Source: Mobula birostris (Eukaryota). Taken from it: 64,000 nt of DNA. A program made the translations under genes and the position numbers. The DNA is taken from contig NC_092375.1 in assembly GCF_030028105.1 (NCBI RefSeq), positions 43,995,130-44,059,129 of the forward strand. The letters are read 5' to 3'. Under the pieces are notes generated by a model. That model ran no database searches. It was not told the origin of the DNA and saw nothing but the letters and a program-made list of their open reading frames with translations. Positions 15,097 through 47,553 of this stretch are shown in pieces. Positions within the stretch are counted from its first letter, which is position 1. Each line of letters opens with the position of its first letter.

Positions 15097-15451
15097 CTGC
15101 AACCGCAACAATCAGCTGAGTTCCGAAGCCCTGAATATTCTTGGAGAACGAAGTGATAGCGTTGCAATAATATGTCCCGCTGTCTGCAAACTCAAGGTTA
15201 TTTATTAATCGTCAAGGTGCTATTGAAACTTGAAGAATTAGTTCCAAACACACTGATGCGACCATCTCCACTCTTGGTGCTGATGTTTCTCGCGTACAAA
15301 TCACCAGAGATCTCTTTAGTAAAATGCCAATAAAAGCTACCATTTACCAACTCTCCCTTGTCTTGTAAAGTACAGCTGAAGGAGGCAGAATCCCCTACCA
15401 GCAGCCGGAGCGATCGGGGAGTTTGCTGCAAATCCAGTCCGGTGGCAGCAC
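15097..15451 (-). pseudogene. Germline-joined VJ-type Ig V-domain exon (NKp30/TMIGD2/CD28-like receptor), frameshifted in this sequence
   Basis: Acceptor tgatag|GT, donor G|GTAGGG. Peptide LDLQQTPRSLRLLVGDSASFSC..FYW..STLTIN, then in the +1 frame NLEFADSGTYYCNAITSFSKNIQGFGTQLIVAVA. Exon length 355 = 3n+1; the extra base(s) lie in ATTAATAAATAACC near 15200. Confidence 0.8.
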
Positions 15452-15556
15452 CTATCACAATACAGCTCGTTAAAGTTGCAAGTAGCAAACAGCAAACATA
15501 ATAATTACACATTAAGTGTGAACAATTGTGTGTCGCTTTGAATCTATTATACTTAC

Positions 15557-15587
15557 AGATTGCTACCAGGACCAGAATGGTGATCAT
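15557..15587 (-). CDS. Leader (signal peptide) exon MITILVLVAI of VJ-type Ig gene
   Basis: ATG at 15587, phase-1 donor T|GTAAGT at 15556. A 105-nt intron joins it to the V exon, giving MITILVLVAICAATG-LDLQQTP. Confidence 0.85.
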
Positions 15588-15759
15588 AATTTTTCTTCGA
15601 AAGGCTGAAGCTCAAGAATAACTGTTCCAAACAATTCGCTTCTATTGTCAGTTCTCGTTTCATCATTTCCTTTTTAAAGCAATGTGACTGGTCATCATCT
15701 TCTCTGACTTGGATAATTTGAATTATGTAGTAAAATCGATTTTTCTCAATACATGAGGA

Positions 15760-16015
15760 CATGGCTTTAAGGTAAGCGGTGGGAAGTTCAAGGGGGATAT
15801 TAGAGGAAGGTTTTTCACTCAGAGTGTGGTTGGTGTGTGGAATGCACGGCCTGAGTCAGTGGTGGAGGCAGATACACTAGTGAAGTTTAAGAGACTACTA
15901 GACAGGTATACGGAGGAATTTAAGGTGGGGGCTTATATGGGAGGCAGGGTTTAAGGGTCGGCACAACATTGTGGGCCGAAGGGCCTGTACCGTACTGTAC
16001 TATTCTATGTTCTAT
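15760..16015 (+). mobile_element. CR1 3' end
   Basis: Near-identical to 20796-21041; ends in tattctatgttctatg. Confidence 0.85.
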
Positions 16016-18836
16016 GTTTTATCTCTAGTTCATCGTCACAGCAACCGGTTTCCGGGACAGACCATGCTCTTAGGTGCCATGCACAAGTCACTGACGGGGA
16101 GCGCAACAATCCAGCCCGTGACAGAGTCTGCACATCCTACAGGGCATTATGGAGCAACAAATGAATTGCAGGACAACCTTGGGGAGTCCAGCTTCACCTG
16201 TGGGGTGGAAGCTGTTGGTGCTTCTGGTGGAACCCCTGTATCAGTATACAGAGCCAAGGTAGTCGGTATAAAGAAGAACAAGGGAGTGGCGAGCCAGGCA
16301 GATGAGAGTGGTGGACGGGGGAAGGATAAAGGATAAAAGATTAAGCCAAATATAGAGAAAATAGGATGGAGTTAGCAGACAAAGCCAGGTGAGGGATGAC
16401 AAAAAAGGAAGATGCTGAAAGGAGGGAGAGATGGAGTGAAAAAGGACGCAGCTTCTGAAGAGAAATAACCAGGAACTCTATATCTGGTCACAACATACTG
16501 ATGCAGCTATAAAGAAAGCAAAACAGCGGCTATGTTTCTTCAGGAGTTTGCGATTTGGTTTATTACCTTTGGTCACCTAAAGCACTCGAAAACTTCTACA
16601 GATGTATCTCGGAGAGCATTCAGACTGGATGCATCACCGTCCGGTATGGGGGTGGGGGGCGGCTACTGCACAGGATCGAAGTAAGCTGCAGAGGGTTGTA
16701 AAATTAGACAGCTTCATCATGGGCACTAGCCTCCATAGTCTCCAATACATCTTCGAGGAGCGGTGCCTCACAATGGTGGCATCCATCATTAGGGACCCCG
16801 TCACCCAGGACATACCCTCTTCTCATTGTTATTATCGGGAAGGAGGTACGGAAGCAGGGGCGGCACTGAGGTGGTGCTAGCTGGGGCTATAGCCCCAGCA
16901 GAAATTGCAATAGCACCAGCGTAGCACCACCAAGAAATTAACTGAAATTTCACATACAAATTGCAGCTGCATTTATTTCTCTGTATAGTTTTGAATACAG
17001 CTTGTTTCTCCAGTTGATCAAGTGAAACGGCGCCCCCAATTACCATAGCACCCACGCAGCAATAAAATTATAAACTCTATCAGATCCACTCTACACTTCT
17101 GCTTATTTGTTCCTTGTCAATGTCTCGCCGTTGCTGCGCTCAGATCAGTTAGGCTGATCTAAGATCACTTAAGGTGGTGATGTCACTCACTCTCACTCAC
17201 GCGTTGATAGTATACATCCAGTCGCAGATCCGTGGTCTCGCGAACTAACGGATCCCCCCCCCACCCCCGCCACCCCCCCACACACACAGTGCTTTTGCAA
17301 GCGAGCGTCAACCTCGCACGTGTATTATTTTGGCCGGCGTGAAAAATGGATCAACTTTTAGTGAGAAAACGACCTCCTCCAGAGGAATCAGTGGTGTCTC
17401 AGCCTGAGCATATCTTAATTGAAAGTGACATGCAGAAAGTAGGGATGAAGACGACAGCAGTTCGTCGAAGGAGTGTGAGGGCGAAGCAGAGGAACAAGAA
17501 ATGGAGCGGGATTCACAAGAGAACGTGGATGAAGCTGCTCTTACTGCTGGTGGGAATACTGTTAGCGATGTTAGCCAGCAGCCTGAGGAAGGACCCCGTC
17601 GGCCAGCATTGAAAATAGTCATAGTCATACTTTATTGATCCCGAGGGAAGCACCATTCGCTGCTCGCAACAGTTTGGCAATCAGCAAGGGAGTTTTATTC
17701 GTGGCTGGTTTGACTGACTGGAATATTCGAGCACGAAAGGTACTACGTTTTGCTTCGCATGCAGGCATTACCTGTCTGGAGGACATGGGTTCTATTCTGA
17801 GTCTACCTTCACTGTCACCGGTTACCGCAACAGGCAGAAAGCTAGAACAGCTTTCAAAACCCACCATGTAAATGCAGCTCATAAGTTTGCTATGGAGGCA
17901 CGGGCCGAATTCAGATTGAGAAAACAAGCGGTTCAAGATTGGGACATAAGCTTGACAAAGGACATGCAAAGATTGTCCAAGAAAATCGTGAGTATATGAG
18001 AGCTGTGGTTGAGTCTCCAGCAAGGACAGACATTGATTGACACAGTGGAATTTCTAGCTCCAATGAGTCCCTACCGCGATGCATTTATAGATTTATACAA
18101 ATTGATCTGCATGTCACTGACTCTACCTGTGACATCTGCCTCGTGCAAACGGAGTTTCTCTTGCCTCAGACCGCTCAAAAACTACCTAAGGAATAACAGT
18201 GAAGATACTCAGAACAGCAACTTGGCCCTGTTGGCCATAAACAGGCAAAGGACCAAAGCACTTGACATCCAGAAAATCATTGATGCTTTCAGCACCAATC
18301 ACAACAGACAGATTGTGCTTCTCTGAAAACATCAATGGTGAGTGCAGTTGATTTTTTTTTAAAAATTCGGCCAAGACTAATGCTGATTATTATTATTATT
18401 TTGTGGTGGATATCCCATAGTCTTTATGTTTCCTGAAAATCCTAAACTATTACATTTACTGCTATTAAGCCTACTGGTTTTGCTTAGACTTCCAAGCAGT
18501 GATTCTGTTGATTTTTGTTTTAAATTCATTAGCCGAATTTGGCAGTTTTGGCAGTTGGTCTGTGCAATCAAGTCAATCAAGATTTGAATAGTTCAGCAGA
18601 AAGCCGTTCATTAGACAATCAAGATTTGAATAGCTCAGACTCAGCAGAAAGCAGCTGATTGGGCAATCGAAGTCAGGTGACCAAGCATTTTGAAAAGCTC
18701 AGATAAATAGAGGGGTAGATCAAGCGGAGCGGCCAGTGAGTGAGTGGGCCAGTGAAGGAGTGGAGCTTTGAGGCTTTGACACGAGAGGCTTCCACGAGAA
18801 GAGGCGGAGGACAAGCTTGATCCCGGTTATTCTTTA

Positions 18837-19673
18837 ATGTCTCCTGAGACGGTAATGTGCTTCTCATGTGGGATGTGGCAGTCTTGGGGGAACTCCCCTC
18901 TCCCGCAGAGTCACATCTGCCAGAAGTGCATATGGCTGGGCCATCTGGAAGACCATGTAAGGAATCTGGAGCAGCACCTGGATGACCTTCGACTCATAAG
19001 GGAGAATGAGGCAGTCATAGATGAGAGCTACAGGGAGGTAGTCACACCTAGGCTGTTGGAAGCAGGTCGTTGGGTGACAGTCAGAGGGGGGAAAGCGAAG
19101 GTGAGCAGACAGGTAGTGCAGAGCACCACTGTAGCCATTCCCCTGAATAATAAGTTTACCATTCTGGATACTGTTGGTGGGGTTGACCAACCAGGTGTGA
19201 GCCACGGTGGCAGGGCCTCCGGCACAGAGTCTGAGCTGGTGGAGCAGAAGCGTGGGATGGAGAAGAGGACAGCTGTTGTCATTGGAGATTCTATAGTCAG
19301 GGGAGCAGACAGGAGATTTTGTGGACGTGAGAAGGACACCTGCATGGTTTGTTGCATCCCAGGTGCCAGGGTCCGGGATGTCTCTGACTGGGTGCACGAC
19401 ATCCTGGTACGAGAGGGAAAGCAACCAGAAGTCGTGATACATGTTGGGACCGACGACATAGGCAGGAAGAGGGATGAGGTCCTGAAGTGTGAGTTTCGGG
19501 AAATAGGCAGAAGGCTGAAGAACAGGACCTCAAGGGTGGCGTTCTCAGGATTGCTGCTAGGGCTACGTGACAATGATGGTAAGAATTGGAGGAGATGGCA
19601 GTTGAATGCGTGGCTGAGGAGTTGGTGCAGGGAGCAGGATTTTAGATTTTTGGATCATTGGGATCATTTTTGA
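18837..19673 (+). CDS. CR1 ORF1 protein (zinc finger/leucine zipper + SGNH esterase), truncated
   Basis: CxxC..CxxC plus heptad leucines, then VIGDSIVRG and VIHVGTDDIG motifs; preceded by a CR1-type 5' UTR from about 18660. Confidence 0.85.
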   Translation: MSPETVMCFSCGMWQSWGNSPLPQSHICQKCIWLGHLEDHVRNLEQHLDDLRLIRENEAVIDESYREVVTPRLLEAGRWVTVRGGKAKVSRQVVQSTTVAIPLNNKFTILDTVGGVDQPGVSHGGRASGTESELVEQKRGMEKRTAVVIGDSIVRGADRRFCGREKDTCMVCCIPGARVRDVSDWVHDILVREGKQPEVVIHVGTDDIGRKRDEVLKCEFREIGRRLKNRTSRVAFSGLLLGLRDNDGKNWRRWQLNAWLRSWCREQDFRFLDHWDHF

Positions 19674-20795
19674 CTTCTGCAGTGCGTTCAACACCATCCG
19701 CCCTGCTCTGCTGGGGGAGAAGCTGACAGCGATGCAGGTGGATACTTCCCTAGTATCATGGATTCTTGATTACCTGACTGGCAGACCACAGTACATGTGC
19801 TTGCAACGCTGTGTGTCGGACAGAGTGATCAGCAGCACTGGGGCTCCACAGGGGACTGTCTTGTCTCCCTTTCTCTTCACCATTCACACCTCAGACTTCA
19901 ACTACTGCACGGAGTCTTGTCGTCTTCAGAAGTTTTCGGATGACTCTGCCATAGTTCGATGCATCAGCAAGGGAGATGAGGCTGAGAACAGGGCTATGGT
20001 AGGAAACTTTGTCACATGGTGTGAGCAGAATTATCTGCAGCTTAACGTGAAAAAGACTGAGGAGCTGGTGGTAGACCTGAGGAGAGCTAAGGTAGCAGTG
20101 ACCCCTGTTTCCATCCAGGGGGTCAGTGTGGACATGGTGGAGGTTTACAAATACCTGGGGATACGAATTGACAATAAGCTGGACTGGTCAAAGAACACTG
20201 AGGCTGTCTACAAGAAGGGCCAGAGCCGTCTCTATTTCCTGAGGAGACTGAGGTCCTTTAACATCTGCTGTACGATGCTGAGGATGTTCTACGAGTCTGT
20301 GGTGGCCAGTGCTATCATGTTTGCTGTTGTGTGCTTGGGCAGCAGGCTGAGGGTGGCAGACACCAAGAGAACCAACAAACTCATTCGTAAGGCCAGTGAT
20401 GTTGTGGGGATGGAACTGGACTCTCTCATGGTGGTGGCTGAAAAGAGGATGCTGTCTAAGTTGCATGCCATCTTGGTCAATGTCTCCCATCCACTACATA
20501 ATGTACTGGTTGGGCACAGGAGTACATTCAGCCAGAGACTCATTCCACCGAGATGCAGCACTGAGCGTCATAGGAAGTCATTACTGCCTGTGGCCATCAA
20601 ACTTTACAACTCCTCCCTTGGGGGGTCAGACATCCTGAGCCAATAGGCTGGTCCTGGACTTATTTCATAATTTACTAGCATAATTTACTTATTACTATTT
20701 AACTATATATGGTTCTATTACTATTTATTATTTATGGAGCAACTGTAACGAAAACCAATTTCCCCCGGGATTAATAAAGTATGACTATGACTATT
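19665..20795 (+). mobile_element. Rex1/Babar-type LINE, 5'-truncated, open RT 3' half
   Basis: ORF 19732-20646 is highly similar to 6342-7752; tail gggattaataaagtatgactatgactat. Confidence 0.9.
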
Positions 20796-21041
20796 TAAGG
20801 TAAGGGGTGGGAAGTTCTAGGGGGATATTAAAGGAAGGTTTTTTACTCAGAGTGTGGTTGGTGCGTGGAATGCACTGCCTGAGTCAGTGGTGGAGGCAAA
20901 TACACTACTGAAGTTTAAGAGACTACTAGACAGGTATATGGAGGAATTTAAGGTGAGGCTTATATGGGAGGCAGGGTTTGAGGGTCGGCACAACATTGTG
21001 GGCCGAAGGGCCTGTACTGTGCTGTACTATTCTATGTTCTA
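20796..21041 (+). mobile_element. CR1 3' end
   Basis: FTQSVVGAWNALPESVVEA region and ttctatg tail. Confidence 0.85.
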
Positions 21042-21659
21042 TGAATTAGTTGAGGTGTTGCATGGTCAGAGTATGATTTCTCCAACTCCTGGTAAAGCCT
21101 TGCATCTGTTGTTTGACAGTTTGCCTTTAATAACAGTGTATCTTTTGGCATTGTCAGTCTATGTAATGCGAATAGCAGTGGACATTGTGGGTGAGTGTTG
21201 TGTTTTTCAGTTGAAAAGCATGCATTTGACGCTGATTGCGGGATTGGTGTGTGATTCACGTTGTGCGCTGTGAATCGGATGCTCTGTTGGTTTGTTTGTT
21301 TGTGCTCTATGTAGCCCGGGTTGTCTCTGATGCTGTTGACACTGTCACAGTTCACTTCTATATTATATTTATCAAATGCTGTTGCTTGTGAATCAACAGA
21401 GGCATTTATAGCAGGCACATAATGCTTGAAACTGACTTTTGAACGCCACGCGTCTGGCCTTGCGAATACATATTACCATACAGTACATTCCTCAGCACCA
21501 TCACTGAATAACTGAGCCCCACTGTAGCACCAGCAAGAAAGAATCTCTGGCGCCGCCACTGTACGGAAGCCTGAAGGCGCGCACACGCACCGATTCAGGA
21601 ACAGCTTCTTCCCTGCCATCTGATTTCTAAGTGGACATTGACCTCATAAACACTTCTTC

Positions 21660-22360
21660 ATTACACACATGAGGCTGCTTAACAAGATAAAATGCTGTTG
21701 TGTTACAGAAAAGATACTGGCATGGGTAGAGGAATAGCTGGCAGGCAGGAGGCAGCGAGTGGGAATAAAAGAGGCCTTTTCTGAATGTCTACCAGTAAAC
21801 AGTGGTGTTCCTCAGGGGTCAGTATAGGGACTGCTACTTTTCACATTGTTTGTTAATGATTTGGATAATGGAATTGATGATTTTGTGGCAAAGTTTTCTG
21901 ATGATAGCTGGAGGAGTAGGTAGTGCTGAGGAAGCAATGCGATTGCAGCAGGACAGACAAATTGGAAGAATGGGCAAAATAGAGGCAGGTGGAATACAGT
22001 GTTGGGAAATGTATGAAAATGCATTTTGGTAAAAGGAACAATAGTGCGGACTATCATCTAAATGGGGAGAAGGTTCAAACATCAAAGGTGCAAAGGGACT
22101 TAGGAGTCCTCTTGCAAGCACCCCGGAAGGTGAATTTATAGCTTGGCTCTGTGGTAAAGAAGGCAAATGCAATGTTAGCATTTATTTCAAGGGAAATAGA
22201 ATATAAAAGCGAGGAGATAACGCTGAGGATTTATGAGACACTAGTCAGGCAGCACATGGAGTATTGTCAACTGTTCTGGGCCCCATATCTCAGAAAGGAA
22301 GTTTTGTCATTGGAGAGAGTCCAGAGGAGGTTCACGAGGATGATTCTGGGAATTTCTCCC
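21660..22360 (+). mobile_element. Degenerate CR1 RT fragment
   Basis: agtggtgttcctcaggggtcagta; ORF 22151-22414 HMEYCQLFWAP. Confidence 0.8.
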
Positions 22361-23704
22361 TCCTATTCACCTCCCCACTCATCCACGTACACACACAGTC
22401 CTCTAATCCCATGATAAGTCATCTCTGCACTCCAGTGGACTCATGGATTCATATGCACAATAGACCCAAGTTCATATTTTCCTTTATGTGAACCCCCTTC
22501 ATTTATTACTTTATATTATATTTATAAGAACAGCATTTTTGGATAGAGGACTAATTCCCTTTCAGTTCCCCAAGCTGGAAGCAAAGCCATAGGAATCAGT
22601 CAAAGCCAAAAGAAAGAATCTTTGTCCATTAATGGCTTCAACTTATTTTGGACCTCTTATATAAGAAAGGATGTCCTTGCATGGTGAAGGAAGCGTCGGG
22701 ACAGGAATCACCCAGCTCTGATGGTCATTTTATAATGTGTAAAATCGCTGCAGAATTTGTGGCGGTTTCACTTCAGTGCGTCACGTGTGGCAGACTGGCG
22801 GAAAGTATAATTTAAAAACTCTTCAATCATTCCAAACATTGGCCGTCTTGCACTGACAACTGATGAAATAGGCAAACGAGAAGCTGGAATTTGTAAATAA
22901 CCACTGAAAATATTTTCTGAAAAGCTAGCAGATGCACTTAAATAAAAAGGAAAAAATGTTGGCAACGTTCAGCAGGTCAGAGAGCATCCAGAGAAAAAAA
23001 AATAAGAGAAAAAATTTTTATCATTTCTGAGAGAAAGTGTGATTCAAGAGACTCAGGGGTAATGATGTGCTGGAAGAACAAGGTGAATGAGCAGCATCTG
23101 TGGGAGGGAAGTTCGCATGGAGACGCTGCATCGGTACTGAGTTATCATTTCATTTAGACATGAAACAGAAAAGCAGAAAATATGTCGCTGCCGGACTTGC
23201 TGAGAGGGGCATCTTAAGTTCTCATTTCAGCAAATGATCACCTGCTTTAAGAGATCGATCACTCAAGCGAGGTGAGGACTTGTCCGCTGTGAATGGTTGG
23301 TATCGAGAAATACCGGCTGAGTCTTAGAGTCACGGAACAATAGGGCCCGAACGCAGCGCCGTCGGTTCAATCAGCCCACGCAGACCACGTTATCCATCTC
23401 TAGCCAGTTCCAATTTCCTGCATTCAGCCCATATTCCTCCAGGCCCCTTCCCTCAAGTGGTTCTTACATAATACTATTGCACATGAATTTTGCACTATTT
23501 AGAAATTTTATGTCTTATCACTGTACCGCTGCCACAAATTCTGCGACATATTTCAATATTAATAAACCTGATTCTCATTCTGATACTGGTTCTTCCTCAA
23601 CTACTTCTTCTGGCAGCTTGTTCCCTATACTCATCACCCTCTGCGTGGGAAAAGTTGTCCCTGGGATCCCTTTTAAATCTTCCCCCTCGTCCTAAATTTA
23701 TGCC

Positions 23705-25095
23705 TGTCATAAGGGGGGCGCTGGGAGCGGACCCAAATGCAAGACACAGACACTGAAGTACTAGGAACCGGACTAGAGTTAGGGACGGGACTGGATGCAG
23801 ACTAGGAGCTGGGACAAGAACACAGACTTGGGCTAGGACTTGACTAGGAAAGCGGGACCTGGACGAGGAACTAGGAACTTGGAAACTGGACAAGGGCTCC
23901 GAGCCAGAGACTGGACAAGGACGCGAAACCTGAGTCTTGACTCGGGTTCGGACCCCGGATCCAAGCAAGGAGATGACGTGGCTACAGGACTGGACGACAC
24001 ACATGGACAGGACGAGAACACAAAGCCTGACTTGGACAGGACTTGGACTAGACGAGGTTCTTGGACGTGGCCAGGACTAGACGAGGTTCTTGGACAGGAC
24101 GAGAGACTCCAGCACAGGATGAAGGAACTCCAGCACCGGGCTGGGCGAGAACACGAAACCTTGATTTGGTCGACGGAAAGACAGGAACGCAGAGCCTTGG
24201 TCGAGGGAGAGACAGGAACGCAGAGCCTTGGTCGAGGGAGAGTGGAACATGGAACACAGAGCCGGGACCCCTCCTTGGGAACAGGACGTAGGGCCAGGAC
24301 TCATACACAGAATGCAGAACATGACGAGATGTTTCTCAACACTAGGTAGCCGCAAACGGCCAGACCTACCTAGCGAAGGTGTGGACACAGAGACAGTTCA
24401 AAACAACGATAGACAGTTCCTTATTTTGCTCTGGTGGTTGAATCTGACAGTGGTGCAGGCGAGGGTTACAGGTGAAGGAAGGCTTCAGGCGAGGTTTGGT
24501 AAGGCTTCAGGCAGGGCTTAGTCATAGTCATACTTTATTAATCCCAGGGGGAAATTGGTTTTCGTTACAGTTGCACCATAAATAATAAATAGTAATAGAA
24601 CCATAAATAGTTAAATAGTAATATGTAAATTATGCCAGTAAATTATGAAATAAGTCCGCAACCAGCCTATCGGCACAGGGTGTCTGACCCTCCAAGGGCG
24701 GAGTTGTAAAGTTTGATGGCCACAGGCAGGAATGACTTCCTATGACACTCTGTGCTGCATCTTGGAGGAATGAGTCTCTGGCTGAATGTACTCCTGTGCC
24801 CACCCAGTACATTATGTAGTGGATGGGAGACATTGACCAAGATGGCCTGCAACTTAGACAGCATCCTCTTTTCAGAACCACCATGAGAGAGTCCACGGGA
24901 GGAAGGGGAGGGGAAGGGAACAGTCCAGCAAGTGAAGCTGACCCCAGGAGCTATTTATGTAGCCAGCCCAAAATCAGATTCATATGCTTCAATTAAGGCA
25001 CACAACAGGACCAGGGAAAACCGGAAAACCTGGAGTACAGATCGATGGACCGGACCATGAACCGGAATGTGGATTTTACGGACCGGACCGTGACA
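23705..25095 (-). mobile_element. Putative solo LTR (Gypsy-like), copy 1, with Rex1 3' insertion at about 24519-24895
   Basis: TGTCA...TGACA termini; homologous in inverted orientation to 25350-26890; no gag/pol; TSD not clear. Confidence 0.6.
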
Positions 25096-25349
25096 TTGTC
25101 CTCTGATTTGGGTTTCCCTTCCCAGGGAAAAGACTGCTTCCATTCCCCATTATCCATGCCTCCCATAATTTAAAATGCTTCTATAAGATTGTCTACCATT
25201 CTCTTACACTCTAAGTAATAAGGATCCAGAGTGACCAGACTTTTTTCATAACTCAGACCCTCTAGACCCAGCAATACCCTCATTTTTGTACTCTTTCCAA
25301 TTTAACTGCAGTTTTTCTATAATAAAGTGACCTAAACTGTACACCAAAC

Positions 25350-26890: not shown

Positions 26891-26919
26891 CAAACTCCAA
26901 ATACAGCCTCTCGAACAAC

Positions 26920-32570: not shown

Positions 32571-32606
32571 ATTCAGGCATGGCGAAGACACTATGATACA
32601 GATATA

Positions 32607-35545: not shown

Positions 35546-35854
35546 ACCTATTTTCTATGTTTCTAAAAAAGTAATTTTGTATCTGCAGTTGTGAATGCCT
35601 TGGACCACATCTAATAAACCAATGTATAAAGAACGTCTTGAAATGTGTCTGTCTTCATCTTTACTGACAGAGTGGTAAGCTTGGTCACCTTTCATCAGAC
35701 AACATCTTATTAAACAGGAGGAGGCAGGAGAACACTGGTTTGCGTGGCCAAAGTAGAACCCTGGGTTAAATTTAAAAACAGCTGAGAGTTGAATCAATGA
35801 ATGCACAGTTGAAAGAAGTTATACTTACTATAAATTCTGATGTAAAATTGCTTG

Positions 35855-36280: not shown

Positions 36281-38868
36281 CCAATGTTTAGATTTTATAT
36301 TATTCTACAGCTGAGTCTTGCTAAAATGTGATTTTCTTGAATTGAGGAAGATGGAATCATCAAGAACCAGGTTGACTTTGTAAGTGATTAGATACGATCT
36401 AAGAGATAAAAGGTAATTAAACCCTTTTATTTATTGGTTGGAGAAAGCAGCGTTCACTGTTTGTTTTCCATGCTGCATGCCAAATAATTGCAAAGTTCCC
36501 AGCCTGGGTCATTTTTCCCCTTTGGGGTGTGAATCGGAAAATTTTAATCTGAGTAATATTCTGCAGTGATGACCAGTACCCAAAGGGATATCCCTTGTTA
36601 CTAAGGAGACAGCTGGATTATTTCCTTCTTCCTAAAACAAGCTAGAATGCTGACATTCTTTAAAATGTAATGGGAGCTTTCTGTAATATGTAAAATAATA
36701 CATTGCTGGTTACTCACCTGGGAAATGCTGGAAGTCCAGAATTCCTTGTGATTTATAAAATGCACTGTGACCTGGGAGTCTATTCAGCTCGAATTTATAT
36801 CGTGACCTAAGAGTTCACGAGTCAAGTTCATCCACTTTGATCAGTAACAAAATCTATTATTACATAGGTATTTTCCTTCTATTTTACTCTCTCTGCATCC
36901 TGTTGGTTGTGTGTAGAAAATTCTTTAAGTATTCTATAAAAGCCAGATAGCTTGGCTGTAAACAGGCCAGATTGAGTTTATACTTGAGCAGATTCTAGGT
37001 CAGGGATTTCCCTTGTGATGGTGAAAACATTTCATGATCCTGTCATTCATTTAACAACCGGCTCCATGTATCCATGGTGTCAATTATGGACAGCAGCAGT
37101 AGTTCAGGCTCATCCATGGGACGAAATTCGATGGCAATATATTCAGAATGAACTTGAGCATTGCTTGAGAGTCTTCAGGAGTTGAATTACAGATACAAGA
37201 ACACAGCTGCAGTCCTTTTCTTCAGGGCTGTTTTCATAGAAACCAATGGCTGGTTCTCTCAATGTCCTTGGATTTTTTCAACCTGTCTTTCACAGCCTGA
37301 ATGTCAATCTCAGTGATATGAAATATGGTTTGCAAAGTAAGTTCACTGTATCTTTCCTGCATTGGTGTTCTTTGACATTTTGTTTTAGCTCCAGTTACAG
37401 TATTCAGTGCCTACTTAACATTGTTCCCTGGTTCTAAGTGTTCACTAAGCTGCTTCTCCCGTGAGGAACATATGTGATTCCATTTCAAAGTGGCTTATTG
37501 TAACTATCAAATAATGGAGATGATGATCAGATTCTGATGTATTTTTCTTTATTCATTTATATGATGAAGGCATTAGTGACAAAGATCAACGTTTACTGCA
37601 ACACTAACTACTTTTGAAAAGGTACTCTTCTAGTTAGGGTTTATGCTGGTAAAAAGAGATTGTAGGCAAGATCATCATCCAGAAAACTGCACAATGGATT
37701 TATGGGCATTTGTGTATACATGCTCAGTCTACAACATTAAGGATGTACTTATGTACTGCTCTCTAAAGCAAGAAAATCTCAGTGCCTGCTTCAGATATTG
37801 AACATTCCAGAAACTAGACTTTGCAATGATAATACAGGAGGAATTAAATCATCAGGGTGGTGTGCAACCTGCCTTTTCAAAATTCCCTCTCTTAATACAT
37901 GAGGGTTTTGCATTTGGACCTGGAGATTTTCATGTAATTGAAGACATTAATCAAAATAACACCTGATCCTTGTATTAATCATTTCACAATCCTATTCAAT
38001 TAATTAATTCAATTATTTTTATTAATCACTTAAATACAGGAAAAGAGGAAAGGAATTAAAATGAAGTAAAATAAAATGCCTCATGTTTGCATCTTTGCAA
38101 ATAATTGTAGACTGAACTTTCTTCAGTAATAATCGTAGAAACAGTATACAGCATATAGCTATGGCTATGTACACTTGTACATACCACCAAGCAGTATTTT
38201 TACTTGCTCTTACCTAACAGTCTTCAGATATACACAAATCACAATACTTGATTCACAGAGTTGGTTCCAACCCGAAAAATTTACCCCACTTTAGAGACCA
38301 CTCACTGACCATGATTCAAATGAGTGGTCTTCCTGAAAATCTATCACCTCTTCCAGTTTTGTTTTCATCTACCAGAGATATAAAATCACATTGCTCTAAT
38401 TTTGGTTAATTACAGTCACTTATAGTAGGAACACTACAGCACAGAGACATGTCCTTCAGCCTATCTAGACCAGACCAATTTATTCTGTCTAGTCCCATCA
38501 ATGTGCCATGGCCCTCCGTGCACCTCCCATCTATACACATATACAAAATTCACCTAAATATTGAAACCAAACCTACATCTACCAATTCCACTAGCAGTGG
38601 TAATTCCTTAATCCCTTACTCCAATGCTGCAACAACACCTCTAAGGGTCTTACTATGTGACCATAAAATCCAGCAAGAAAACTAGTTTTAGTTCAACCTT
38701 AACATATATTGGATTAGCCATTTTGATTAACAAAGCTGCAAATGTTTTTAAACCAAAAAACCAGAAATAAGAAAACAGTAAGTCAAATAATATCACTGAG
38801 CAGAGAGACATATCCAGCCATCCCTATTAAGGTTCCAAAACCGGAAAAAATAACAAACTAAGCAGAGA

Positions 38869-39031
38869 GTGGAGAGAAGGGAGGGGCAGACAGGGTGGAG
38901 AGAAGGAAGGGGCAGGCAGGGTGGAGAGGAGGGAGGGGCAGGCAGGGTGGAGAGAAAGGGAGGGGCAGGCAGGGTGGAGAGAAGGGAGGGACAGGCAGGG
39001 TGGAGAGGAGGGAGGGGCAGGCAGGGTGGAG
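38869..39031. repeat. 26-bp G-rich tandem repeat, about 6 copies
   Basis: Unit gtggagagaagggaggggcaggcagg. Confidence 0.9.
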
Positions 39032-39070
39032 TGGAATGTCCATGGTAGGTTGGAGACAAAAGTTGCTCAC

Positions 39071-39140
39071 GTAACAACTAACTTTTTAAAAAGGGCTGTT
39101 GGAGACAAAAAGGAAGTAAGTTGAATCAGTAAGATCCCAG
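39071..39140 (-). CDS. Candidate hydrophobic C-terminal exon of B7-like gene, (A)GILLIQLTSFLSPTALFKKLVV
   Basis: Strong acceptor cttaccctttctctctgcag, donor |GTGAGC; only the phase-1 frame is open, matching the IgC exon end. Confidence 0.45.
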
Positions 39141-39332
39141 CTGCAGAGAGAAAGGGTAAGTAAGGTTGGCCAGGGTTAAAATCTCTTCCTTTAATGTATC
39201 AAAAGAAGTAGTAACTGGTGGGAGAAATTCAACTTATGATCTGTAGACCACAAGTTCTCTGCATGTTGCTCTTTGCCTGTCTGAAATTCAAGCATCATTA
39301 AAACGGACAAGCTCCAGAGTATGAAGAGTTTA

Positions 39333-39699
39333 CAGTCATCCCTCAGTATCCGCAGGGGACTGGTTCCAGGACCACACTACCCCCCCCCCCCCCACCCCAG
39401 CTAGCCATCCCTTACTAGCCTTAAACTCCTTCCTCTCACTCACTACACAAGTAGCAAAACAAACGAGACGCAGAGTAAACAGTGCACAACTGAGTGCTGG
39501 ACAGAGACTGAGGATCTGTGAAATGGCAGAAGGCTACAGCAGGGCATATCACTTCATTCACGTGGATTCGCATAATGCTCGGTGCGCAGCAAATTCAAAT
39601 TTTGCTTTTTGGAACTTTCTGGAATTTTTTTCGAGTATTTTCAATCCACGGTTGGTTGAGTCCGCGTATGCGGAACCTGCGGATACGGAGGGCCGAATG
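39333..39699. mobile_element. Tigger/pogo-like MITE
   Basis: TA|CAGTCATCCCTCAGTATCCG ... CGGATACGGAGGGCCGAATG|TA. Confidence 0.75.
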
Positions 39700-40479
39700 T
39701 ACTCTGAATCAAGTTTAGGTAAAAGATGGACATTCCTTGTTACATTTCTCCCTTGTTACATTTCCCCCAAATTCAGCCTTAGATACATCCAACCACCGAA
39801 AGGATTTATTATAGTTAAGAAGCAATAAACTTTGGAAGTTTTGCTGCGAGCGTATGACTGTTTCGAGAAACACATCTTTTCAATTATAAATCTGATGGCT
39901 TCTCTCCATTATCCACACGGATAAGGTGTTTTCCATCTGAAAATACAAATGGGAACAAAAGTCAACATTTATTCTGCTAATACTGTGTATACATCAGCAG
40001 GGCTATCATAATGAAATAATCTTAAATTGATTGTAATTCTGTATCTTTTATTTAGCCTTAGATTATTTCATATTCAGGTTTAAAATAAGCATTGATCATT
40101 CTAAAACACAGTACAACAATTGCACTCAATTTTACACTGTGCACTTCCTCAGTTTTCTGCATTCCTACCAACAAAATCGTTACCTTACCTGAAAATTCTC
40201 AGTGATGGAAACCACTTGGTTAGTGAAAACCAGAAAACAGTTGTCAGTCATTCTGCATTACTAACAATTTCTAAAGTTTCTCATGATCTACAACCAGATA
40301 ATTGTGCCAAATTTAGTTAATCCATCTCTGCAGTACTGTATTCAAGTGGAATTATTTTCCCAAAATAGGTTCATTTGTATTTACTCAAAGTTCTATATAT
40401 GCTTAATTTAATGTACCAAGTCAAAATGGTGCCAAGCAATGATGTCTGTCAAGTTGTGGCTCAGACTTATTCCTTTGAG

Positions 40480-41275
40480 GCTAAGGAATGGTTTTGGGGA
40501 CATTGAGCAATTACAGGTCAGGTTTGGGTTTCGGGGCATAGATGCCGGGGAGATAAAGGTTAGGGCCTGTAAATGAAGAGTGAGGGCAGGAGTTGGTGGT
40601 CATAGTCCAGGCTGAAGCACTGAGGATGAAGATCAGCTATCCCCATGGTCAAGGACTGTGGTTGGCTGGTCCCAAAGATGTAGGGTTGGTGACCCTCCCA
40701 GGCCGCCAAGCCCTGGGTTCGGAAGTCCATGCGAGTCTGGAGGTCTATGCTCAGAGTTGAACATCCCATGTGATTGGTCAACCCTGGGGTCAACACCAAA
40801 GGTCAAAGAGCAAAATCAGCGAGTTCAAAAATTGGGGCCTGAAGGTTGAAGCCCTGAAATTTGAAGCCCCTTGATCAGTGTGTTCGGAAGTTGCTGGCTC
40901 AACATTCGTGAGTCTAGGCTAGGGACTAGGGTTAGAGGCACAATGTCTATGCCTGCTGAGTGTTCGAGGCCAAGGACTGGGGTCAAAGGCTCAGAGGTGG
41001 CCAGTCCTGGGGTTGGAGGGGGGTGTGTGTGTGTGTGTGTGTGTATTGATAGGTGAGAAAGGGACTTCTCTTGCTGTGTTTTTTTGCTTTGTTGTTGGTG
41101 TTGTTGCTTGGGTTGTTCTGCTGATCATAGTGAACATACTATATTGGTGCCGGAATGTGTGGCAACACTTGTGGGCTGCCCCAACACAACCTTGGGTCGT
41201 GTTGGTTGTTAACACAAACGACAAATTTCATTGTATGCTTCGATGTACATGTGATAAATAAATTAATCTGAATCT
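40480..41275 (+). mobile_element. LINE 3' UTR-type repeat
   Basis: Ends in gataaataaattaatctgaatctgaat; contains a (gt)n tract; start approximate. Confidence 0.5.
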
Positions 41276-42795
41276 GAATGTACTTCTTGTTTCTTGATGT
41301 TCCTCCTCCAAAACTGTTAGAGCGTGCAACAGTTTAATCTCAGCATGCAAAAAAATCTAGTTTTTAAATTATAATTAGAAATAACAAATAAGCTTTCTAA
41401 CTCAATACAAAATAAAAACAGCAAGTGCCAGAAATGTGCTGCAGATCAGGAAAGTGGAAAAAGGATTAATATATAATTGTGAAGACCCTTTGTTGGAACT
41501 GGAGAAGGGGAGAACACAGTTTGGTGTCAAGGTATGGGATAAGTGACAGAGGGATGAACAGAACAAAGGGAGTATATAGGGTAAGAGGAGGCCAGGGTAA
41601 GATGATTCAATGGGTGCAGTTAGGAAGAGATAACAAAGTCTTCTGCTCAAAATAACCCAATGCATGATTAGGGAGCAACACCTCATCTTCTATCTGGGCA
41701 TGTGCCGACTCAAAATTGAATCCTACCACTTTGGGTAACACACTTTATCCATGTAAAATCAGGCCAGGTGGCTCTGGGATATTGGTTCATTTTCTTTTGT
41801 CTGTCCATAAGCCTGACCTAGGCTTGTTCTATTGGATGGCATCTCCTTTGTGTTCTCACATTCCAACGGCTCCCATATTGTAGCTTTTATGCCATTTTCT
41901 TTGTTTTTGTTCCAACCAATACTGGGTAACAGAACACCTTCAATAGCAGCATTATAACCAAATTCCCATGATTATCTAATTGTGAACTTGTAGTGATGCT
42001 CATTGAAGCTGCACTTATTGCGCTAGCATACCCTCATCATTCACAAGAATGATGTCCTAAAAAATATTTTCTCTTTAGGTCACGCTAAGAGCTTCATAAA
42101 GCCTGAACCATAGTTAAATTTACAAAGTGTGCTTCTGTCAATCATGTTCACCCGCCAGAAATGGAAGGCAGCGTCCAGACTGCTATGTGGGAAACTGGAA
42201 AAGAACAAAAACTGAGTGTGTAACAGAGGCATGTTCAGCAATGGTAAAAGCTGGAATACCTGTGAATGAATGAGGATGGTCATTTCGGACAAATCAAGTT
42301 ACAACACTGGAAAATGACATTGCAATATTAACCTACAAGTGCAAATTCCAACAGAAAGTCTGGTTACAAATTCCTGATGTAATGCAATGCAATGTAACCT
42401 GGAAACAATCACTAATATACTCAGCACAAAATTAAATCTATGTTCAATAACACTGTGCTGTTTTTCTAATGATTTACTTGAACTTAAGCCAGCTCTGCAC
42501 TGACTTTAAATAACTATTGTAATTAAACATTAATCCAGTTACTTGTGAAATTGTCAAGAATTCTCCCAAAACTATCACTTAATTCTTAATAAGCATTATT
42601 TAATTTGCCCTTTTCTTAACATTTCAAGCTGGGCTTTAATTTCTGATTTAAAAATCTATGGAATGCAATTTCTAGTGATTGTACTAAAAGGTTATGATTA
42701 AATAACACAACATTACTTAAAATATTTCCAGATTTCCTCTATTTTCAGCCTTGCTCAGTTTCTACACTTTTGTTCTTCCTTTGTTTCTCCTTGTA

Positions 42796-43568
42796 CAATG
42801 GGTTCCATTAATTGGGGCACATCACGATCAGTACATTTTAGCCCAATTAACCTGCTGCCCCAATTAGCCGAGGTTTCATGGAAATCATTAAAAAGGTGTA
42901 AAAAACACAAACTGAGTAACAAATTATGTATTTAACTGAAATATGGAACAAATTGGAAGACTACCAATGCTACTACAGTACTATAAAACTCTGTATTGGT
43001 TCTTAATAGTTATCAACAGAGGAATTCATTCAGTGTATGCAATGAACAAAATCAGTGCGGACACCTACTGCAGATGATGAACTGCCTTCATACAATGTTT
43101 TTGCTGAATGGATACTCCAAATCTTCATTTGCATTGTAACATTCAAGATGACTGCCCATACCTTCAAATTCTCAGTAGTTCCTAACTTGTTGAAGTAATG
43201 AAATAATTTCATTTTTCACTCCCACCATTTCTTGCTTGACACCTCACTGATCAAAATAGTTCTGAATTGCCTGACTGCTTATTTCTTGACAACTATCAGT
43301 GACAAAAATCACTGATTTTTGAACACAAACACACAAAACTGATGCTATTTAAAAACAGTTCACCCTTAAGCATGATGTAGCGTCTAACAACCACACAAGT
43401 GCTAGTTAGAACCTGTTCAGCAAGTCTCCTGTCCTAATTAAGGGGCATGGTGTCACAAATAAACAAAGGGTACCTGGCTATTTTCTCAATTAGTTTTTGG
43501 TCTTAATAGTTGTCCTAAATAAACAGCTGCCCTAGTTAACTGAAAGCCCAATTAACTAGAATCCACTG
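42796..43568. mobile_element. Tigger/pogo-like non-autonomous DNA transposon
   Basis: TA|CAATGGGTTCCATTAATTGGG ... CCCAATTAACTAGAATCCACTG|TA imperfect TIRs. Confidence 0.7.
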
Positions 43569-43656: not shown

Positions 43657-43926
43657 CTGAGAATATCACTCGAGTCTGCGTAGGCTTGACCATCCATCGA
43701 TGAGTCATGGAGCAGATATAGTGATTCACCTTATCAATTACTTTCAAATCATTTGTCACGTTGAAATATCCATCACTTTCCCTCAATTTTATTTCATTAT
43801 GCACTGCCAATGCATTCCCACGCTGGTCCCTCCACGTAACTTCTGGAGCAGGGTACCACCCTGAAGACCGGCATGACAGCACATCTGAATCGGAATCCCA
43901 GAAAACATGGATGCCATCTGTACTAG
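43657..43926 (-). CDS. B7/butyrophilin-family IgC-domain exon
   Basis: 270-nt phase 1-1 exon (ttggtag|CT ... TCAG|GTAGGT): LSCRSSGWYPAPEVTWRD..GYFNVTNDL..YICSMTH, the B7-type C domain signature. Confidence 0.9.
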
Positions 43927-44658: not shown

Positions 44659-44857
44659 AACAACAGGAATTCTGCAGATGCTGGAAATTCAAGCAACACA
44701 CATCAAAGTTGCTGGTGAACGCAGCAGGCCAGGCAGCATCTCTAGGAAGACGTCAGGACGTCCTGACGAAGGGTCTCGGCCTGAAACGTCGACTGCACCT
44801 CTTCCTAGAGATGCTGCCTGGCCTGCTGCGTTCACCAGCAACTTTGATGTGTGTTGC
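44659..44857. mobile_element. Penelope-derived hairpin insertion with intact minimal hammerhead core
   Basis: 14-bp TSD ATGAGTTATCAGAA (44645-44658 and 44858-44871); perfect 58-bp inverted arms (44693-44750 / 44800-44857); core CTGACGA-AGG gtctcgg CCT-GAAAC-GTC at 44763-44790. Confidence 0.85.
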
Positions 44858-46202
44858 ATGAGTTATCAGAAGAGTGTTCGATGTATTTGAGCCAGGATCA
44901 CTCACAAGATGTTCAAGGAACATTTCATCAATTTTTTTTTAAGACTCCTCGTCAAGTAGCCATACTAAATAGCCAGTTCAAATAGAAATGGAAGTTATAC
45001 AATATACAAATCAGTAATAGTCACTAGATGCAGTGCCAGGGAATAGTTGGTGCCATGTGGGTTCCAGTCAAACCAAACAGTGAATTCTGCAATCACCATT
45101 CCTTCGGGACTAGAGACTAGCAATAGTTGTTCTATAAAAGGCTGTTATGTGATGGTGTTATAAATAAATTTAATAGCTACTGGGCAGAACTCCATCTTTG
45201 TCGTCACTTCATATCTGATCTGGTACTGCTATAATATTAAATACTGCATTTTCACACCTTTAGCTAGAAGCCTTAGCTATTCGTATATTGTTTAACAGTT
45301 TTGGTTTTCCATCCATTGCCATCAAACCAAAATATAGTTCTATTTTTACTCATAAAACTATTTCTAAGTGTGTTTTTCTTGTAGAAATGCTACTAATGCC
45401 AAGGTATCAGGGAAGAGTCATAAGCTTTACAGAATTATGTGATTGTTCTTATACCGTTCAGTCTATGGGGAAATGTTTGTCACTTTATTACCTAAAGATG
45501 ATAGGGTGTAATTTCTGCAAATGTCTCTCCACTTTGCCCTCAGCTGCGGTAGAGAGCCTGGGATTTGGCATATTTACCATCATTGCCCATCAACTTAATT
45601 GAATGAAGAAATGAATGAAAATAACCGAAGACTAGTTTACAGATGGTAAAGACCTCAAGAGGAGGCAGAGAAGAATCATACACGTGCTATTTCAGAAGAT
45701 GACCGTAGATGGTTCAGTATTGTCTTTGGTCTTCACAGTTGCCTTCTCATCAAGGATGGTGATATTCATGATGTATGATGTAAAACTACAAAGACTTTTA
45801 CTTATCTCAGAAAAAGGCCATTCAGCCCCACTGGTCCATGCTGACCAATATGCTCCCTCCAAGCTAAACCAGTTTTGTCTTTGGTCCATAAACTTCTAAA
45901 CCTTTCCAATCTGTGCACCTGTCCAACTGTTTCTGAAGAGATATAACTGTGTTCTATCAAGTGATAACTTAATACTGTCTGTAGCATATGACCTAGCCCA
46001 CATTCCTATATTGTATTTTCACCTGATGGATGTTTCCTTTTGAGCTCTACCTAATAATATTCTGGGATGTCCATATCCATCACTCACTGAACATAGGTTG
46101 GTCCTTAGGTTAAAATACAACGTTACTGATTCTGGTGGAACATAATCCTAGCACTCTGAAAGCTGGCAGTGCTTACAACTGGGCAGATTTGAACTGTGGT
46201 AA

Positions 46203-46424
46203 CACAAACAAGAGACAATCTGCACATGCTGGAAATCCAAGCATCGCACACACAATGCTGGAGGAACTCAGCAGGCCAGGCAGCATCTATGGGAAAGAGA
46301 AAAAAAAGAGTACAGTTGACATTTTGGGCCCAGGACCTTCATCAGGATTGAAGGGTCTGGCCCCAAAACGTCGACTAGGTGCTGCCTGGCCTGCTGGGTT
46401 TCACCAGCATTTTGTGTGTGTTGC
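46203..46424. mobile_element. Older Penelope-derived hairpin insertion with two decayed hammerhead-like motifs
   Basis: 14-bp TSD with one mismatch TTGAACTGTG(G/C)TAA (46189-46202 and 46425-46438); imperfect inverted arms. Confidence 0.75.
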
Positions 46425-47211
46425 TTGAACTGTGCTAAGGCTGCCCAATTTAATGTTATAGAACTACGGAACATGCAACATAATTGTATCCTCAATCTGA
46501 ACACAGGGCTTTGTCACCAACAGCTTATAAACTGTATCAGCAACAAATAGACTGGTTACAGGAAGGTCAGGTGGGTTGCTCACTTGACCTGCAAAAGATC
46601 TAGTAACTATGTCTGTCAGGACTTGATTAGCTCTGTCAGCTATGATGCCACTGCATCAGTCTAGATGATAAGACCCGTAAGATATAGGAGCAGAAATAGG
46701 ACATCAAGTCAGCTCCGCCATTCCAGCATACAACATCCATTTCCCAGTATCCCTTCATGCACTGACTAATCTATCAACCTCTACCTTGACTATACCCAAT
46801 GATGGCATTGATAAACTCAGGAAAAATGTGTTTTACTGCTACAAGTGATGTTTTTTTTAATTGCCAGAGCCTAACAGCAGAGTGCTGCTACTTTTTCCAA
46901 CACTGTGCAATTGAAAATTGATTTAACAAGGAGTAAATTGCATTTGGTACTATTTCCAGGAAAAACCACGCTGACCTTCAACTGATAATTCTGGCCAAGT
47001 CACCCTATTTCAAATTCAGAGACTTGGTTACAATGAGCTTTAATGCAACACAATGCTTTAATATTTTTAGGCTGCTGTCTTCTGTAAAAGGTAGTGTTAA
47101 TCAGTAAAACATACCCTTTTATTTCTTGCCACTATTGTCATTACAATTTAAAAAAATGAAACTAAAGTGTATTTCACCCTCACTGAGAGCAGAGCAAGAT
47201 ATGTGGCATAC

Positions 47212-47553
47212 CCCAAACAGGCAGATGAACAACTGCTTTTCCATATCCACCATCAGTGCTAACAAACAACATGTAATCTCCTTCATCCCAAAGATTAACA
47301 TTCTTCAATGTAAGAAATGCTTTGCCGTTATTGATTGAATTTTCATCAACTTGAATTCTTTTTGAGTAGTTGGCATGCTGGTTGCTGAAATCACTTTTAC
47401 TTTCTTTGTACTCATATAAAATTTCAGAGCCAGGATTCTTCTCCCATTTCACTGCTGGAGTACATTGGCCATTGCAATCAAATGAACACTCGAAGGTGAC
47501 AGATCCTCCAATTTCTGCAGCTGGTTCCTGCTCACACTCAACTCTGAATGCAC
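47212..47553 (-). CDS. B7-family (VTCN1/B7-H4- or BTN-like) IgV-domain exon
   Basis: 342-nt phase 1-1 exon (tttattcag|GT ... TGGG|GTATGC): GGSVTFECSF..VKWEK..YSKRIQVDENSINNGKAFLTLKNVNLWDEGDY..GYGKAVVHL; splices in frame to the IgC exon. Confidence 0.9.

What the first reader, a model, noticed from the sequence alone, without database searches (positions are those of the whole stretch)
15097..47553. Tandem linkage of a VJ-type receptor gene and a B7-family ligand gene: possible cis receptor-ligand pair
Seen: both genes are on the minus strand, with the V-gene leader about 28 kb from the B7 IgC exon and no other clearly recognisable host gene between them. Established: B7 proteins bind VJ/V-type receptors (B7-H6 with NKp30, HHLA2 with TMIGD2, CD80/86 with CD28), and these pairs are unlinked in human. 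Inference: this could be an ancestral or lineage-specific linked receptor-ligand module. Binding is entirely untested.
Basis: partly seen in the sequence, partly recalled or inferred. Interest (0 to 1): 0.75.

Follow-up and report, generated by a model that had tools for sequence, protein, structure and literature searches.

The report
Broken ray receptor gene beside B7-like gene
A manta-type ray has a B7/butyrophilin-type gene 27 kb from a small NKp30-style activating receptor gene, and a shark has the same pairing, but this receptor copy is broken by a 4-base duplication and binding between the two is untested.

Summary
Both genes are real, both are on the minus strand, and only retroelement debris lies between them.

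- **B7 gene:** I extended it to four in-phase coding exons (50024 to 42847). It encodes 249 aa: leader, IgV, IgC, TM and a 9-aa tail. Its IgV matches human VTCN1/B7-H4 best. Its IgC matches butyrophilins best.
- **VJ gene:** it has three exons (15587 to 5464): leader, germline-joined VJ domain, and a TM with an Arg plus a 4-aa tail. That is an NKp30-style activating layout.
- **Frameshift:** in this species the V exon carries a 4-base tandem duplication (ATAA, 15198-15201). Independent read contigs confirm it. A sister species about 2% diverged lacks it and keeps an open frame. This copy is therefore a young pseudogene.
- **Relatives:** only two shark homologues were found. In Mustelus asterias the homologue lies between a TRIM45-like gene and a 242-aa V-set/C2-set_3 gene. 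The linkage therefore predates the shark-ray split.
- **Not NKp30/B7-H6:** neither gene shows a specific affinity for that pair.
- **Binding:** untested. A cross-species complex prediction gave no answer.

The scan found this module before on other DNA of the same cluster (s1-145163, s1-145164).

The parts
49976..50024 (-). B7-like gene, leader exon. ATG at 50024; 16 codons plus 1 base; hydrophobic signal peptide.
   Evidence: A scan for ATG + hydrophobic core + phase-1 donor gave one strong candidate, with a perfect TTG|gtaagt donor. It joins in frame to the IgV exon. No RNA or homologue confirms it.
47212..47553 (-). B7-like gene, IgV exon (phase 1-1). The F-strand Cys is replaced by Leu, and there are extra Cys in the A strand and BC loop.
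   Evidence: Pfam V-set 5.4e-10. Best single-domain PDB match is human VTCN1 IgV (38.6 bits, 1.1e-8), with Leu opposite the conserved Cys. Splice sites. ESMFold pLDDT about 81.
43657..43926 (-). B7-like gene, IgC exon (phase 1-1).
   Evidence: Pfam C2-set_3 6e-15. PDB best hits are BTN2A1 (1.7e-8), BTNL8 and CD276; B7-H6 scores only 0.03. Splice sites. Four RNA-like runs of the same species hold 68-80% of the words of 43450-44150.
42847..42935 (-). B7-like gene, candidate TM/tail exon: about 18 hydrophobic residues, then KPRLIGAAG and a stop.
   Evidence: Strong acceptor (ccatatttcag|) and phase-1 compatible. It gives a 249-aa product, close to the 242-aa Mustelus neighbour. Inferred only. An alternative hydrophobic exon near 41487 fits the phase less well.
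15557..15587 (-). VJ receptor gene, leader exon (MITILVLVAI plus 1 base).
   Evidence: ATG, gtaagt donor and a 105-bp leader intron as in Ig/TCR V genes.
15097..15451 (-). VJ receptor gene, germline-joined V-J exon with YYC and a GxGTxLxV J-like motif (GFGTQLIV). Frameshifted.
   Evidence: V-set on both pieces. 50% and 43% identity to shark proteins P0002 and P0004. Weak, roughly equal PDB similarity to VNAR, TCR V-alpha and NKp30.
15198..15201 (-). 4-base tandem duplication (ATAA ATAA on the coding strand) that shifts the V exon frame and creates TAA at 15200-15198.
   Evidence: Contigs of organism A (X1) and organism C (X9) carry it. The WGS contig (X5) and the RNA-like contig (X10) of organism B both lack these 4 letters. 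Without them the three exons read as one 159-codon ORF.
5464..5561 (-). VJ receptor gene, last exon: short stalk, TM with an Arg (LLTILRYSLFVLLLCYFICV), tail EKFF, stop.
   Evidence: tblastn with P0004 gives 56% identity over its C-terminal 32 residues. The acceptor ttccag|AA is in phase with the V exon end.
15588..42846 (.). Intergenic interval. It holds retroelement fragments and tandem repeats, and no recognisable host gene.
   Evidence: RVT_1 and GDSL/OSK-like LINE ORFs. A 57-bp x 12 tandem array at 31037-31734. No VJ or B7 paralogous exon by tblastn.

Best explanation
The window holds two units of a tandemly expanded, elasmobranch-wide IgSF cluster.

(1) The first unit is an apparently intact B7/butyrophilin-family gene. 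It encodes a leader, an IgV, an IgC, a TM and a 9-aa tail, 249 aa in all. By its IgV and its genomic neighbourhood it is closest to VTCN1/B7-H4. With no signalling tail it would act as a cell-surface ligand.

(2) The second unit lies 27 kb downstream on the same strand. It is one copy of a small shark-and-ray family of single-V receptors with a ready-joined V-J domain. The TM carries an arginine and the tail is only 4 aa. By analogy with NKp30 and similar receptors, it would signal through an ITAM adaptor.

In this species the receptor copy was recently inactivated by a 4-base tandem duplication in the V exon. A sister species still has the open frame.

Shown:
- both gene models;
- the frameshift and its absence in a relative;
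- the shark homologues;
- the same gene order in a shark.

Inferred:
- the activating function;
- the ligand role;
- the VTCN1 assignment.

Whether the receptor family binds the neighbouring B7 proteins is unknown.
For: Gene structures, splice phases and domains.

B7 identity:
- Best single-domain IgV match is VTCN1 at 38.6 bits, ahead of MOG, PD-L1, BTN1A1 and each single CD276 domain.
- Best IgC matches are BTN2A1 and BTNL8.
- The protein atlas gives butyrophilin-type clusters.

VJ family:
- An exhaustive HMMER search found only two true homologues, both 171-aa shark proteins.
- One of them has the same Arg-bearing TM.

Linkage:
- Mustelus asterias has a TRIM45-like gene (RING, B-box, filamin; 571 aa), then the VJ gene, then a V-set/C2-set_3 gene.
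- TRIM45 and VTCN1 fall in one association locus in chicken (PMC12934296).

Frameshift: X1 and X9 contigs carry the duplication, and X5 and X10 lack it. Without those 4 letters the three exons read as one 159-codon ORF.

Transcription hint for the B7 gene.
Against: - The VTCN1 assignment rests on one IgV match and on synteny. The IgC and the atlas point to butyrophilins, and no phylogeny was possible.
- The B7 IgV lacks the canonical F-strand Cys, so it could be functionally degenerate.
- The B7 leader and TM exons are predicted from sequence only.
- The runs called RNA are guesses by the tool.
- Manta linkage to TRIM45 comes from earlier scan notes, not from this window.
- The second shark homologue (Chiloscyllium) shows no called neighbour within 10 kb.
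Confidence: 0.72

Rival explanations
1. At family level the VJ receptor and the adjacent B7-like protein are a co-evolving, genetically linked receptor-ligand pair. The copy in this window would be a dead member of that system.
For: - The adjacency is conserved between a shark and a ray (and this window).
- The receptor has an activating-type TM, and the B7 gene has no signalling tail.
- B7/butyrophilin IgV domains are known to bind V-type domains: NKp30, CD28-family receptors and gamma-delta TCR V regions (established knowledge).
- Earlier scan notes report further VJ and B7 copies interleaved nearby (s1-145163, s1-145164). These are leads only.
Against: - There is no binding evidence. The complex prediction scored 0.00, which counts as no answer. 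It was cross-species and run without alignments.
- Human 1p13 is IgSF-rich, so linkage may reflect common descent alone.
- Two of the manta VJ copies are reported or shown to be frameshifted, which fits weak constraint.
Confidence: 0.2
2. The two genes are the ray orthologues of NKp30 (NCR3) and B7-H6 (NCR3LG1), a known co-evolving pair.
For: - The receptor has a single VJ domain, a charged TM and a short tail, as NKp30 does.
- NKp30 appears among weak PDB hits (20.8 bits).
Against: - VNAR and TCR V-alpha score higher than NKp30.
- The exhaustive search with the V fragment found no other V-family protein at E <= 0.001 besides the two homologues.
- The B7 IgC matches B7-H6 only at E 0.03, against 1.7e-8 for BTN2A1.
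- The locus is a TRIM45 block. NCR3 is described as MHC-linked (PMC10751288).
Confidence: 0.04
3. The frameshift is an assembly error, and the receptor is intact in this species.
For: The site is an A/T-rich short repeat, a context prone to indel errors.
Against: - Two separate contig sets (X1 and X9) reproduce the 4 extra letters.
- X1 differs from the window at 15111, so it is not simply the same haplotype.
- The difference is a clean 4-base tandem duplication, absent in two runs of a sister species.
Confidence: 0.04

Closest known systems
VTCN1 / B7-H4 (human 1p13, next to TRIM45)
   Same: - IgV-IgC ectodomain with a hydrophobic C-terminal anchor and almost no cytoplasmic tail.
- Best single-domain PDB match of the IgV.
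- A TRIM45-like neighbour in the shark locus.
   Different: - 249 aa against 282 aa.
- The F-strand Cys is replaced by Leu, and there are extra Cys residues.
- The IgC looks more butyrophilin-like.
- Reported as multi-copy in the manta (scan notes).
- Orthology was not tested by phylogeny.
NKp30 (NCR3) with B7-H6
   Same: - The receptor has one non-rearranging VJ domain, a TM with a basic residue and a very short tail.
- The proposed ligand is a B7-family IgV-IgC protein.
- Co-evolution of that pair is documented (Flajnik et al. 2012, cited in PMC12227049; not readable here).
   Different: - No specific sequence affinity to NKp30 or B7-H6.
- The location is a TRIM45 block, not the MHC.
- Receptor and candidate ligand are adjacent here, while NKp30 and B7-H6 are unlinked in human.
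Butyrophilins binding gamma-delta TCR V domains (BTN2A1 with V-gamma-9; BTNL3/8 with V-gamma-4)
   Same: A B7/BTN-type IgV-IgC protein alongside an antigen-receptor-type V domain. The IgC here matches BTN2A1 best, and the V domain resembles TCR and VNAR V domains.
   Different: No B30.2 exon was seen. The receptor is a fixed single-chain V, not a rearranged TCR. Binding is untested.
Genetically linked receptor-ligand pairs (Nkrp1-Clr in the rodent NK complex; CD2-CD58 on human 1p13)
   Same: Receptor and candidate ligand genes are interleaved in one cluster, with the adjacency conserved across lineages.
   Different: Those pairs are proven to bind. Nkrp1-Clr are lectins, and CD2-CD58 are paralogues of each other. 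Here the two genes belong to different IgSF families and binding is unknown.

Membership tests
B7-H4 / VTCN1 | IgV + IgC ectodomain on 1-1 phase exons | tested here: met
   V-set 5.4e-10 and C2-set_3 6e-15. Phase-1 splice sites.
B7-H4 / VTCN1 | Closest sequence relative among B7/BTN proteins is VTCN1 | tested here: inconclusive
   The IgV best single-domain hit is VTCN1 at 38.6 bits. The IgC best hits are BTN2A1 and BTNL8; the VTCN1 chain matched in the IgV search (4gos, 125 aa) is V-set only and no VTCN1 chain matched the IgC. The atlas gives butyrophilin clusters. No tree was possible.
B7-H4 / VTCN1 | Position next to TRIM45 | tested here: inconclusive
   Shown for the homologous arrangement in Mustelus. 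For the manta it is known only from scan notes (s1-145083, s1-145164).
B7-H4 / VTCN1 | Canonical B-F disulfide of the IgV | tested here: not met
   Leu aligns with the F-strand Cys of VTCN1, CD276 and MOG.
NKp30 / NCR3 | Single non-rearranging VJ domain with a J-like GxGTxLxV motif | tested here: met
   YYC...GFGTQLIV lies within one exon. The shark homologues have GTGTRLII and GSGSHLIV.
NKp30 / NCR3 | TM with a basic residue and a short tail (adaptor-dependent signalling) | tested here: met
   Arg within the TM and a 4-aa tail, in both the manta exon and P0004. Adaptor pairing itself was not tested.
NKp30 / NCR3 | Specific sequence relationship to NKp30 | tested here: not met
   NKp30 scores 20.8 bits, below VNAR (29.1) and TCR V-alpha (25.6). 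No NCR3-type protein appears among the hits of the exhaustive search.
NKp30 / NCR3 | MHC linkage | tested here: not met
   The shark homologue lies beside a TRIM45-like gene. NCR3 is described as MHC-resident (PMC10751288). The manta MHC position was not examined here.
Linked receptor-ligand module | Conserved physical linkage of the two genes | tested here: met
   Manta window (27 kb apart, same strand) and Mustelus (10 kb apart, same strand).
Linked receptor-ligand module | Direct binding of the two products | tested here: inconclusive
   Complex prediction scored 0.00, which is no answer. The test was cross-species: manta IgV against the Chiloscyllium V domain.

The most novel reading that the evidence does not exclude
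The TRIM45-block VJ receptors of sharks and rays may be the ancestral receptor lineage for VTCN1/B7-H4-type ligands. They would have been kept next to their ligand genes in elasmobranchs and lost or dispersed in tetrapods. That would give a first structural class to search for the still-undefined B7-H4 receptor.
Probability: 0.1. Interest if true: 0.8.

Novelty: new variant of a known kind. Interest (0 to 1): 0.5.

Why it matters
B7-H4/VTCN1 is an immune checkpoint ligand whose receptor is still described as poorly understood (PMC13588502, 2026). Here a small activating V-type receptor family is held next to VTCN1/butyrophilin-like genes in both a shark and a ray. That gives a concrete, testable candidate partner. 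It is also a further example of non-rearranging VJ receptors in a region rich in IgSF genes. The specific copy in this window is a recent pseudogene, so its own value is mainly as a dated example of birth-and-death turnover in the cluster.

Tried and rejected
- **Word-indexed protein searches:** searches with the V ORF and the B7 IgV ORF found nothing. With P0004 the search found only P0004 itself. Length limits and divergence mean this says little.
- **Complex prediction:** manta B7 IgV against the Chiloscyllium VJ domain gave no support and no evidence against.
- **Hydrophobic ORF at 38213-38025 as B7 TM exon:** rejected, because it has no usable splice sites.
- **Hydrophobic exon near 41487:** its good acceptor at 41499 gives the wrong phase, so I kept it only as an alternative.
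- **Leader candidate at 47968:** rejected for a weak donor and a poor signal peptide. I preferred 50024.
- **TM candidate at 3534-3364 for the VJ gene:** dropped once homology identified 5561-5464.
- **"CD8 beta-like" name of P0002:** this is an automatic label. No CD8 chain appears among the best 60 PDB hits, and the architecture differs.
- **Papers not held:** Flajnik 2012, Ohta & Flajnik 2015 and Kinlein 2021 could not be read. What they say about shark NCR3/B7H6 linkage could not be checked.
- **Protein atlas searches:** these gave only generic V-set or butyrophilin clusters.
Full report
**What is in the window**

The sequence is repeat-rich vertebrate DNA. Earlier scan notes name the source as the giant manta ray.

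**The VJ gene**

- The leader exon is 15587-15557 and ends T|gtaagt.
- A 105-bp intron follows, then one exon (15451-15097) encoding a complete V domain that runs straight into a J-like strand. The motif is YYC...GFGTQLIV, that is GxGTxLxV.
- That exon ends AG|gtaggg in phase 1.
- Both halves of the exon match Pfam V-set.
- Read from the ATG, the frame stops at TAA 15200-15198. The remainder of the domain is in the +1 frame.

**Relatives of the VJ gene**

- An exhaustive HMMER search of 1.84 billion representative proteins, using the first 83 residues of the domain, found 27 hits. Only two are real relatives.
- Both are 171-aa shark proteins: XP_043556870.1 of Chiloscyllium plagiosum, auto-named "CD8 beta chain-like", and XP_078088791.1 of Mustelus asterias, uncharacterized.
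- They are 50% and 43% identical to the manta V exon.
- The Mustelus protein ends in a TM helix with an Arg and a 4-residue tail.
- tblastn located the matching manta exon at 5561-5464, 56% identical. Its acceptor ttccag|AA is in phase with the V exon, and it reads EIGTNLHYLLTILRYSLFVLLLCYFICVEKFF-stop.
- The gene therefore has three exons spread over 10.1 kb, with LINE fragments in its long intron.
- The architecture is one VJ domain, almost no stalk, a basic residue in the TM and no signalling tail. Adaptor-dependent activating receptors such as NKp30 are built this way. NKp30's TM charge interaction with CD3-zeta is described in PMC12272517.

**The frameshift is real and young**

I laid contigs of four public runs on 14900-15750.

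- A whole-genome contig of organism A (X1) carries the assembled sequence at the frameshift site. It may come from the assembly's own sample, but it differs from the window at 15111.
- Two contigs of organism C (X9) also carry the assembled sequence there.
- A whole-genome contig (X5) and a short RNA-like contig (X10) of organism B both lack 4 letters at 15198. Organism B shows 17 substitutions in 851 bases.
- On the coding strand the window reads ATAA ATAA where organism B has a single ATAA. The lesion is a 4-base tandem duplication.
- With the 4 letters absent, leader, V and TM exons read as one 159-codon ORF. Organism B's five other exon differences are 3 non-synonymous and 2 synonymous, with no stops.
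- All splice sites and the TM exon are still intact in the window.
- The copy is therefore a recent pseudogene in this species, not an assembly error and not an old relic.

**The B7 gene**

- The IgV exon is 47553-47212 and the IgC exon 43926-43657. Both have consensus phase-1 splice sites.
- A scan for ATG + hydrophobic core + phase-1 donor found one strong leader exon at 50024-49976, with donor TTG|gtaagt.
- A scan for phase-1 acceptors followed by a hydrophobic stretch found a good last exon at 42935-42847. Its acceptor is ccatatttcag|, and it encodes about 18 hydrophobic residues, then KPRLIGAAG and a stop.
- Joined, the four exons give an open 249-aa protein with two N-glycosylation sites.
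- The leader and TM exons are inferences from sequence alone.
- Four RNA-like runs of the same species hold 68-80% of the words of a 701-base stretch around the IgC exon. RNA-like runs of organism A hold only 7-22% of the VJ stretch. This suggests the B7 gene is transcribed, but the tool's "RNA" label is a guess and I had no further read-laying run.

**What kind of B7 gene it is**

- Against solved structures, the IgV's best single-domain match is human VTCN1/B7-H4 (38.6 bits, 1.1e-8). It scores ahead of MOG, PD-L1, BTN1A1 and each individual domain of CD276.
- The IgC matches BTN2A1, BTNL8 and CD276. It matches B7-H6 only at E 0.03.
- Pfam calls the IgC C2-set_3, the BTN3A2-like Ig-C.
- The protein atlas returns butyrophilin-type clusters.
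- No B30.2-like ORF lies downstream.
- The F-strand Cys of the IgV is replaced by Leu, and there are additional Cys in the A strand and BC loop. The domain is still predicted to fold with pLDDT about 81.
- A scan note reports the same peculiarity in a paralogous IgV about 20 kb outside the window (s1-146162). If true, that argues for a family trait rather than decay.
- I therefore call it a B7/butyrophilin-family gene that is VTCN1-like, not a B7-H6 orthologue.

**Linkage**

- In the Mustelus asterias assembly, the VJ homologue lies 6.7 kb downstream of a 571-aa RING/B-box/filamin protein. That domain set and size are those of TRIM45.
- It lies 10 kb upstream of a 242-aa protein with V-set and C2-set_3 domains. 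All three are on one strand.
- From my own knowledge, TRIM45 is the neighbour of VTCN1 in human. In chicken the two share one association locus (PMC12934296).
- The Chiloscyllium locus showed no called neighbours within 10 kb, which is uninformative.
- Scan notes place further VJ copies 94 kb (also frameshifted) and 152 kb beyond this window, interleaved with B7 genes, and TRIM45/TTF2 about 226 kb beyond (s1-145163, s1-145164, s1-145083). I could not read that DNA, so these are leads only.
- Together, the VJ-B7 adjacency predates the shark-ray split and sits in the TRIM45/VTCN1 block.

**Is it NKp30/B7-H6?**

No specific affinity was found.

- With the intact shark protein as query, VNAR (29.1 bits) and TCR V-alpha (25.6) outrank NKp30 (20.8).
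- The exhaustive search returned no NCR3-type protein.
- NCR3 is described as MHC-resident (PMC10751288).
- The family works like NKp30 in layout but fails the membership tests for sequence and location.

**Does the pair bind?**

Unknown. The only computational test available was cross-species: manta B7 IgV against the Chiloscyllium V domain, without alignments. It scored 0.00, which the tool defines as no answer.

In favour of binding:
- the conserved adjacency;
- the complementary layouts, an adaptor-type receptor against a tail-less ligand;
- the family precedent of B7/BTN IgV domains engaging V-type domains.

Against binding:
- the block is rich in IgSF genes, so linkage can be inherited without interaction;
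- VJ copies are decaying in the manta.

I put family-level binding at about 0.2. The pair in this window is non-functional in this species.

**Verdict**

The linkage is old and real. The NKp30/B7-H6 analogy holds only for architecture. This receptor copy is dead, and binding is open.
- The scan has already met this module on neighbouring DNA.

Noticed in passing
window 47212-47553 (-): The B7 IgV has Leu where the canonical F-strand Cys should be, and three extra Cys (one in the A strand, two in the BC loop as CNGQC). It is still predicted to fold with pLDDT about 81. An alternative disulfide pattern is possible.
   Followed up: partly
It has at least six full or partial copies in this window at 78-96% identity. 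One copy lies in the IgV-IgC intron.
   Followed up: partly
window 31037-31734: A tandem array of a 57-bp unit, about 12 copies at 93% match. It creates long spurious ORFs on both strands.
   Followed up: no
window 53750-59453 (+): A largely open LINE lies 3.7 kb upstream of the B7 leader exon. It has a 251-aa ORF1-like protein and several ORF2 pieces.
   Followed up: no
window 18837-20646 (+): A retroelement whose first ORF matches GDSL-lipase/OSK-type esterase domains, followed by a reverse-transcriptase ORF. This is the esterase-bearing LINE type.
   Followed up: no
window 15111: The organism-A read contig (X1) and organism B both have G where the window has A (Thr against Ile in the J-like strand). 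The window haplotype therefore carries a derived or heterozygous variant.
   Followed up: no
window 50025-50045 (-): A good splice acceptor (ttcttttcag|g) lies immediately before the B7 ATG. This suggests an unlocated non-coding first exon further upstream.
   Followed up: no
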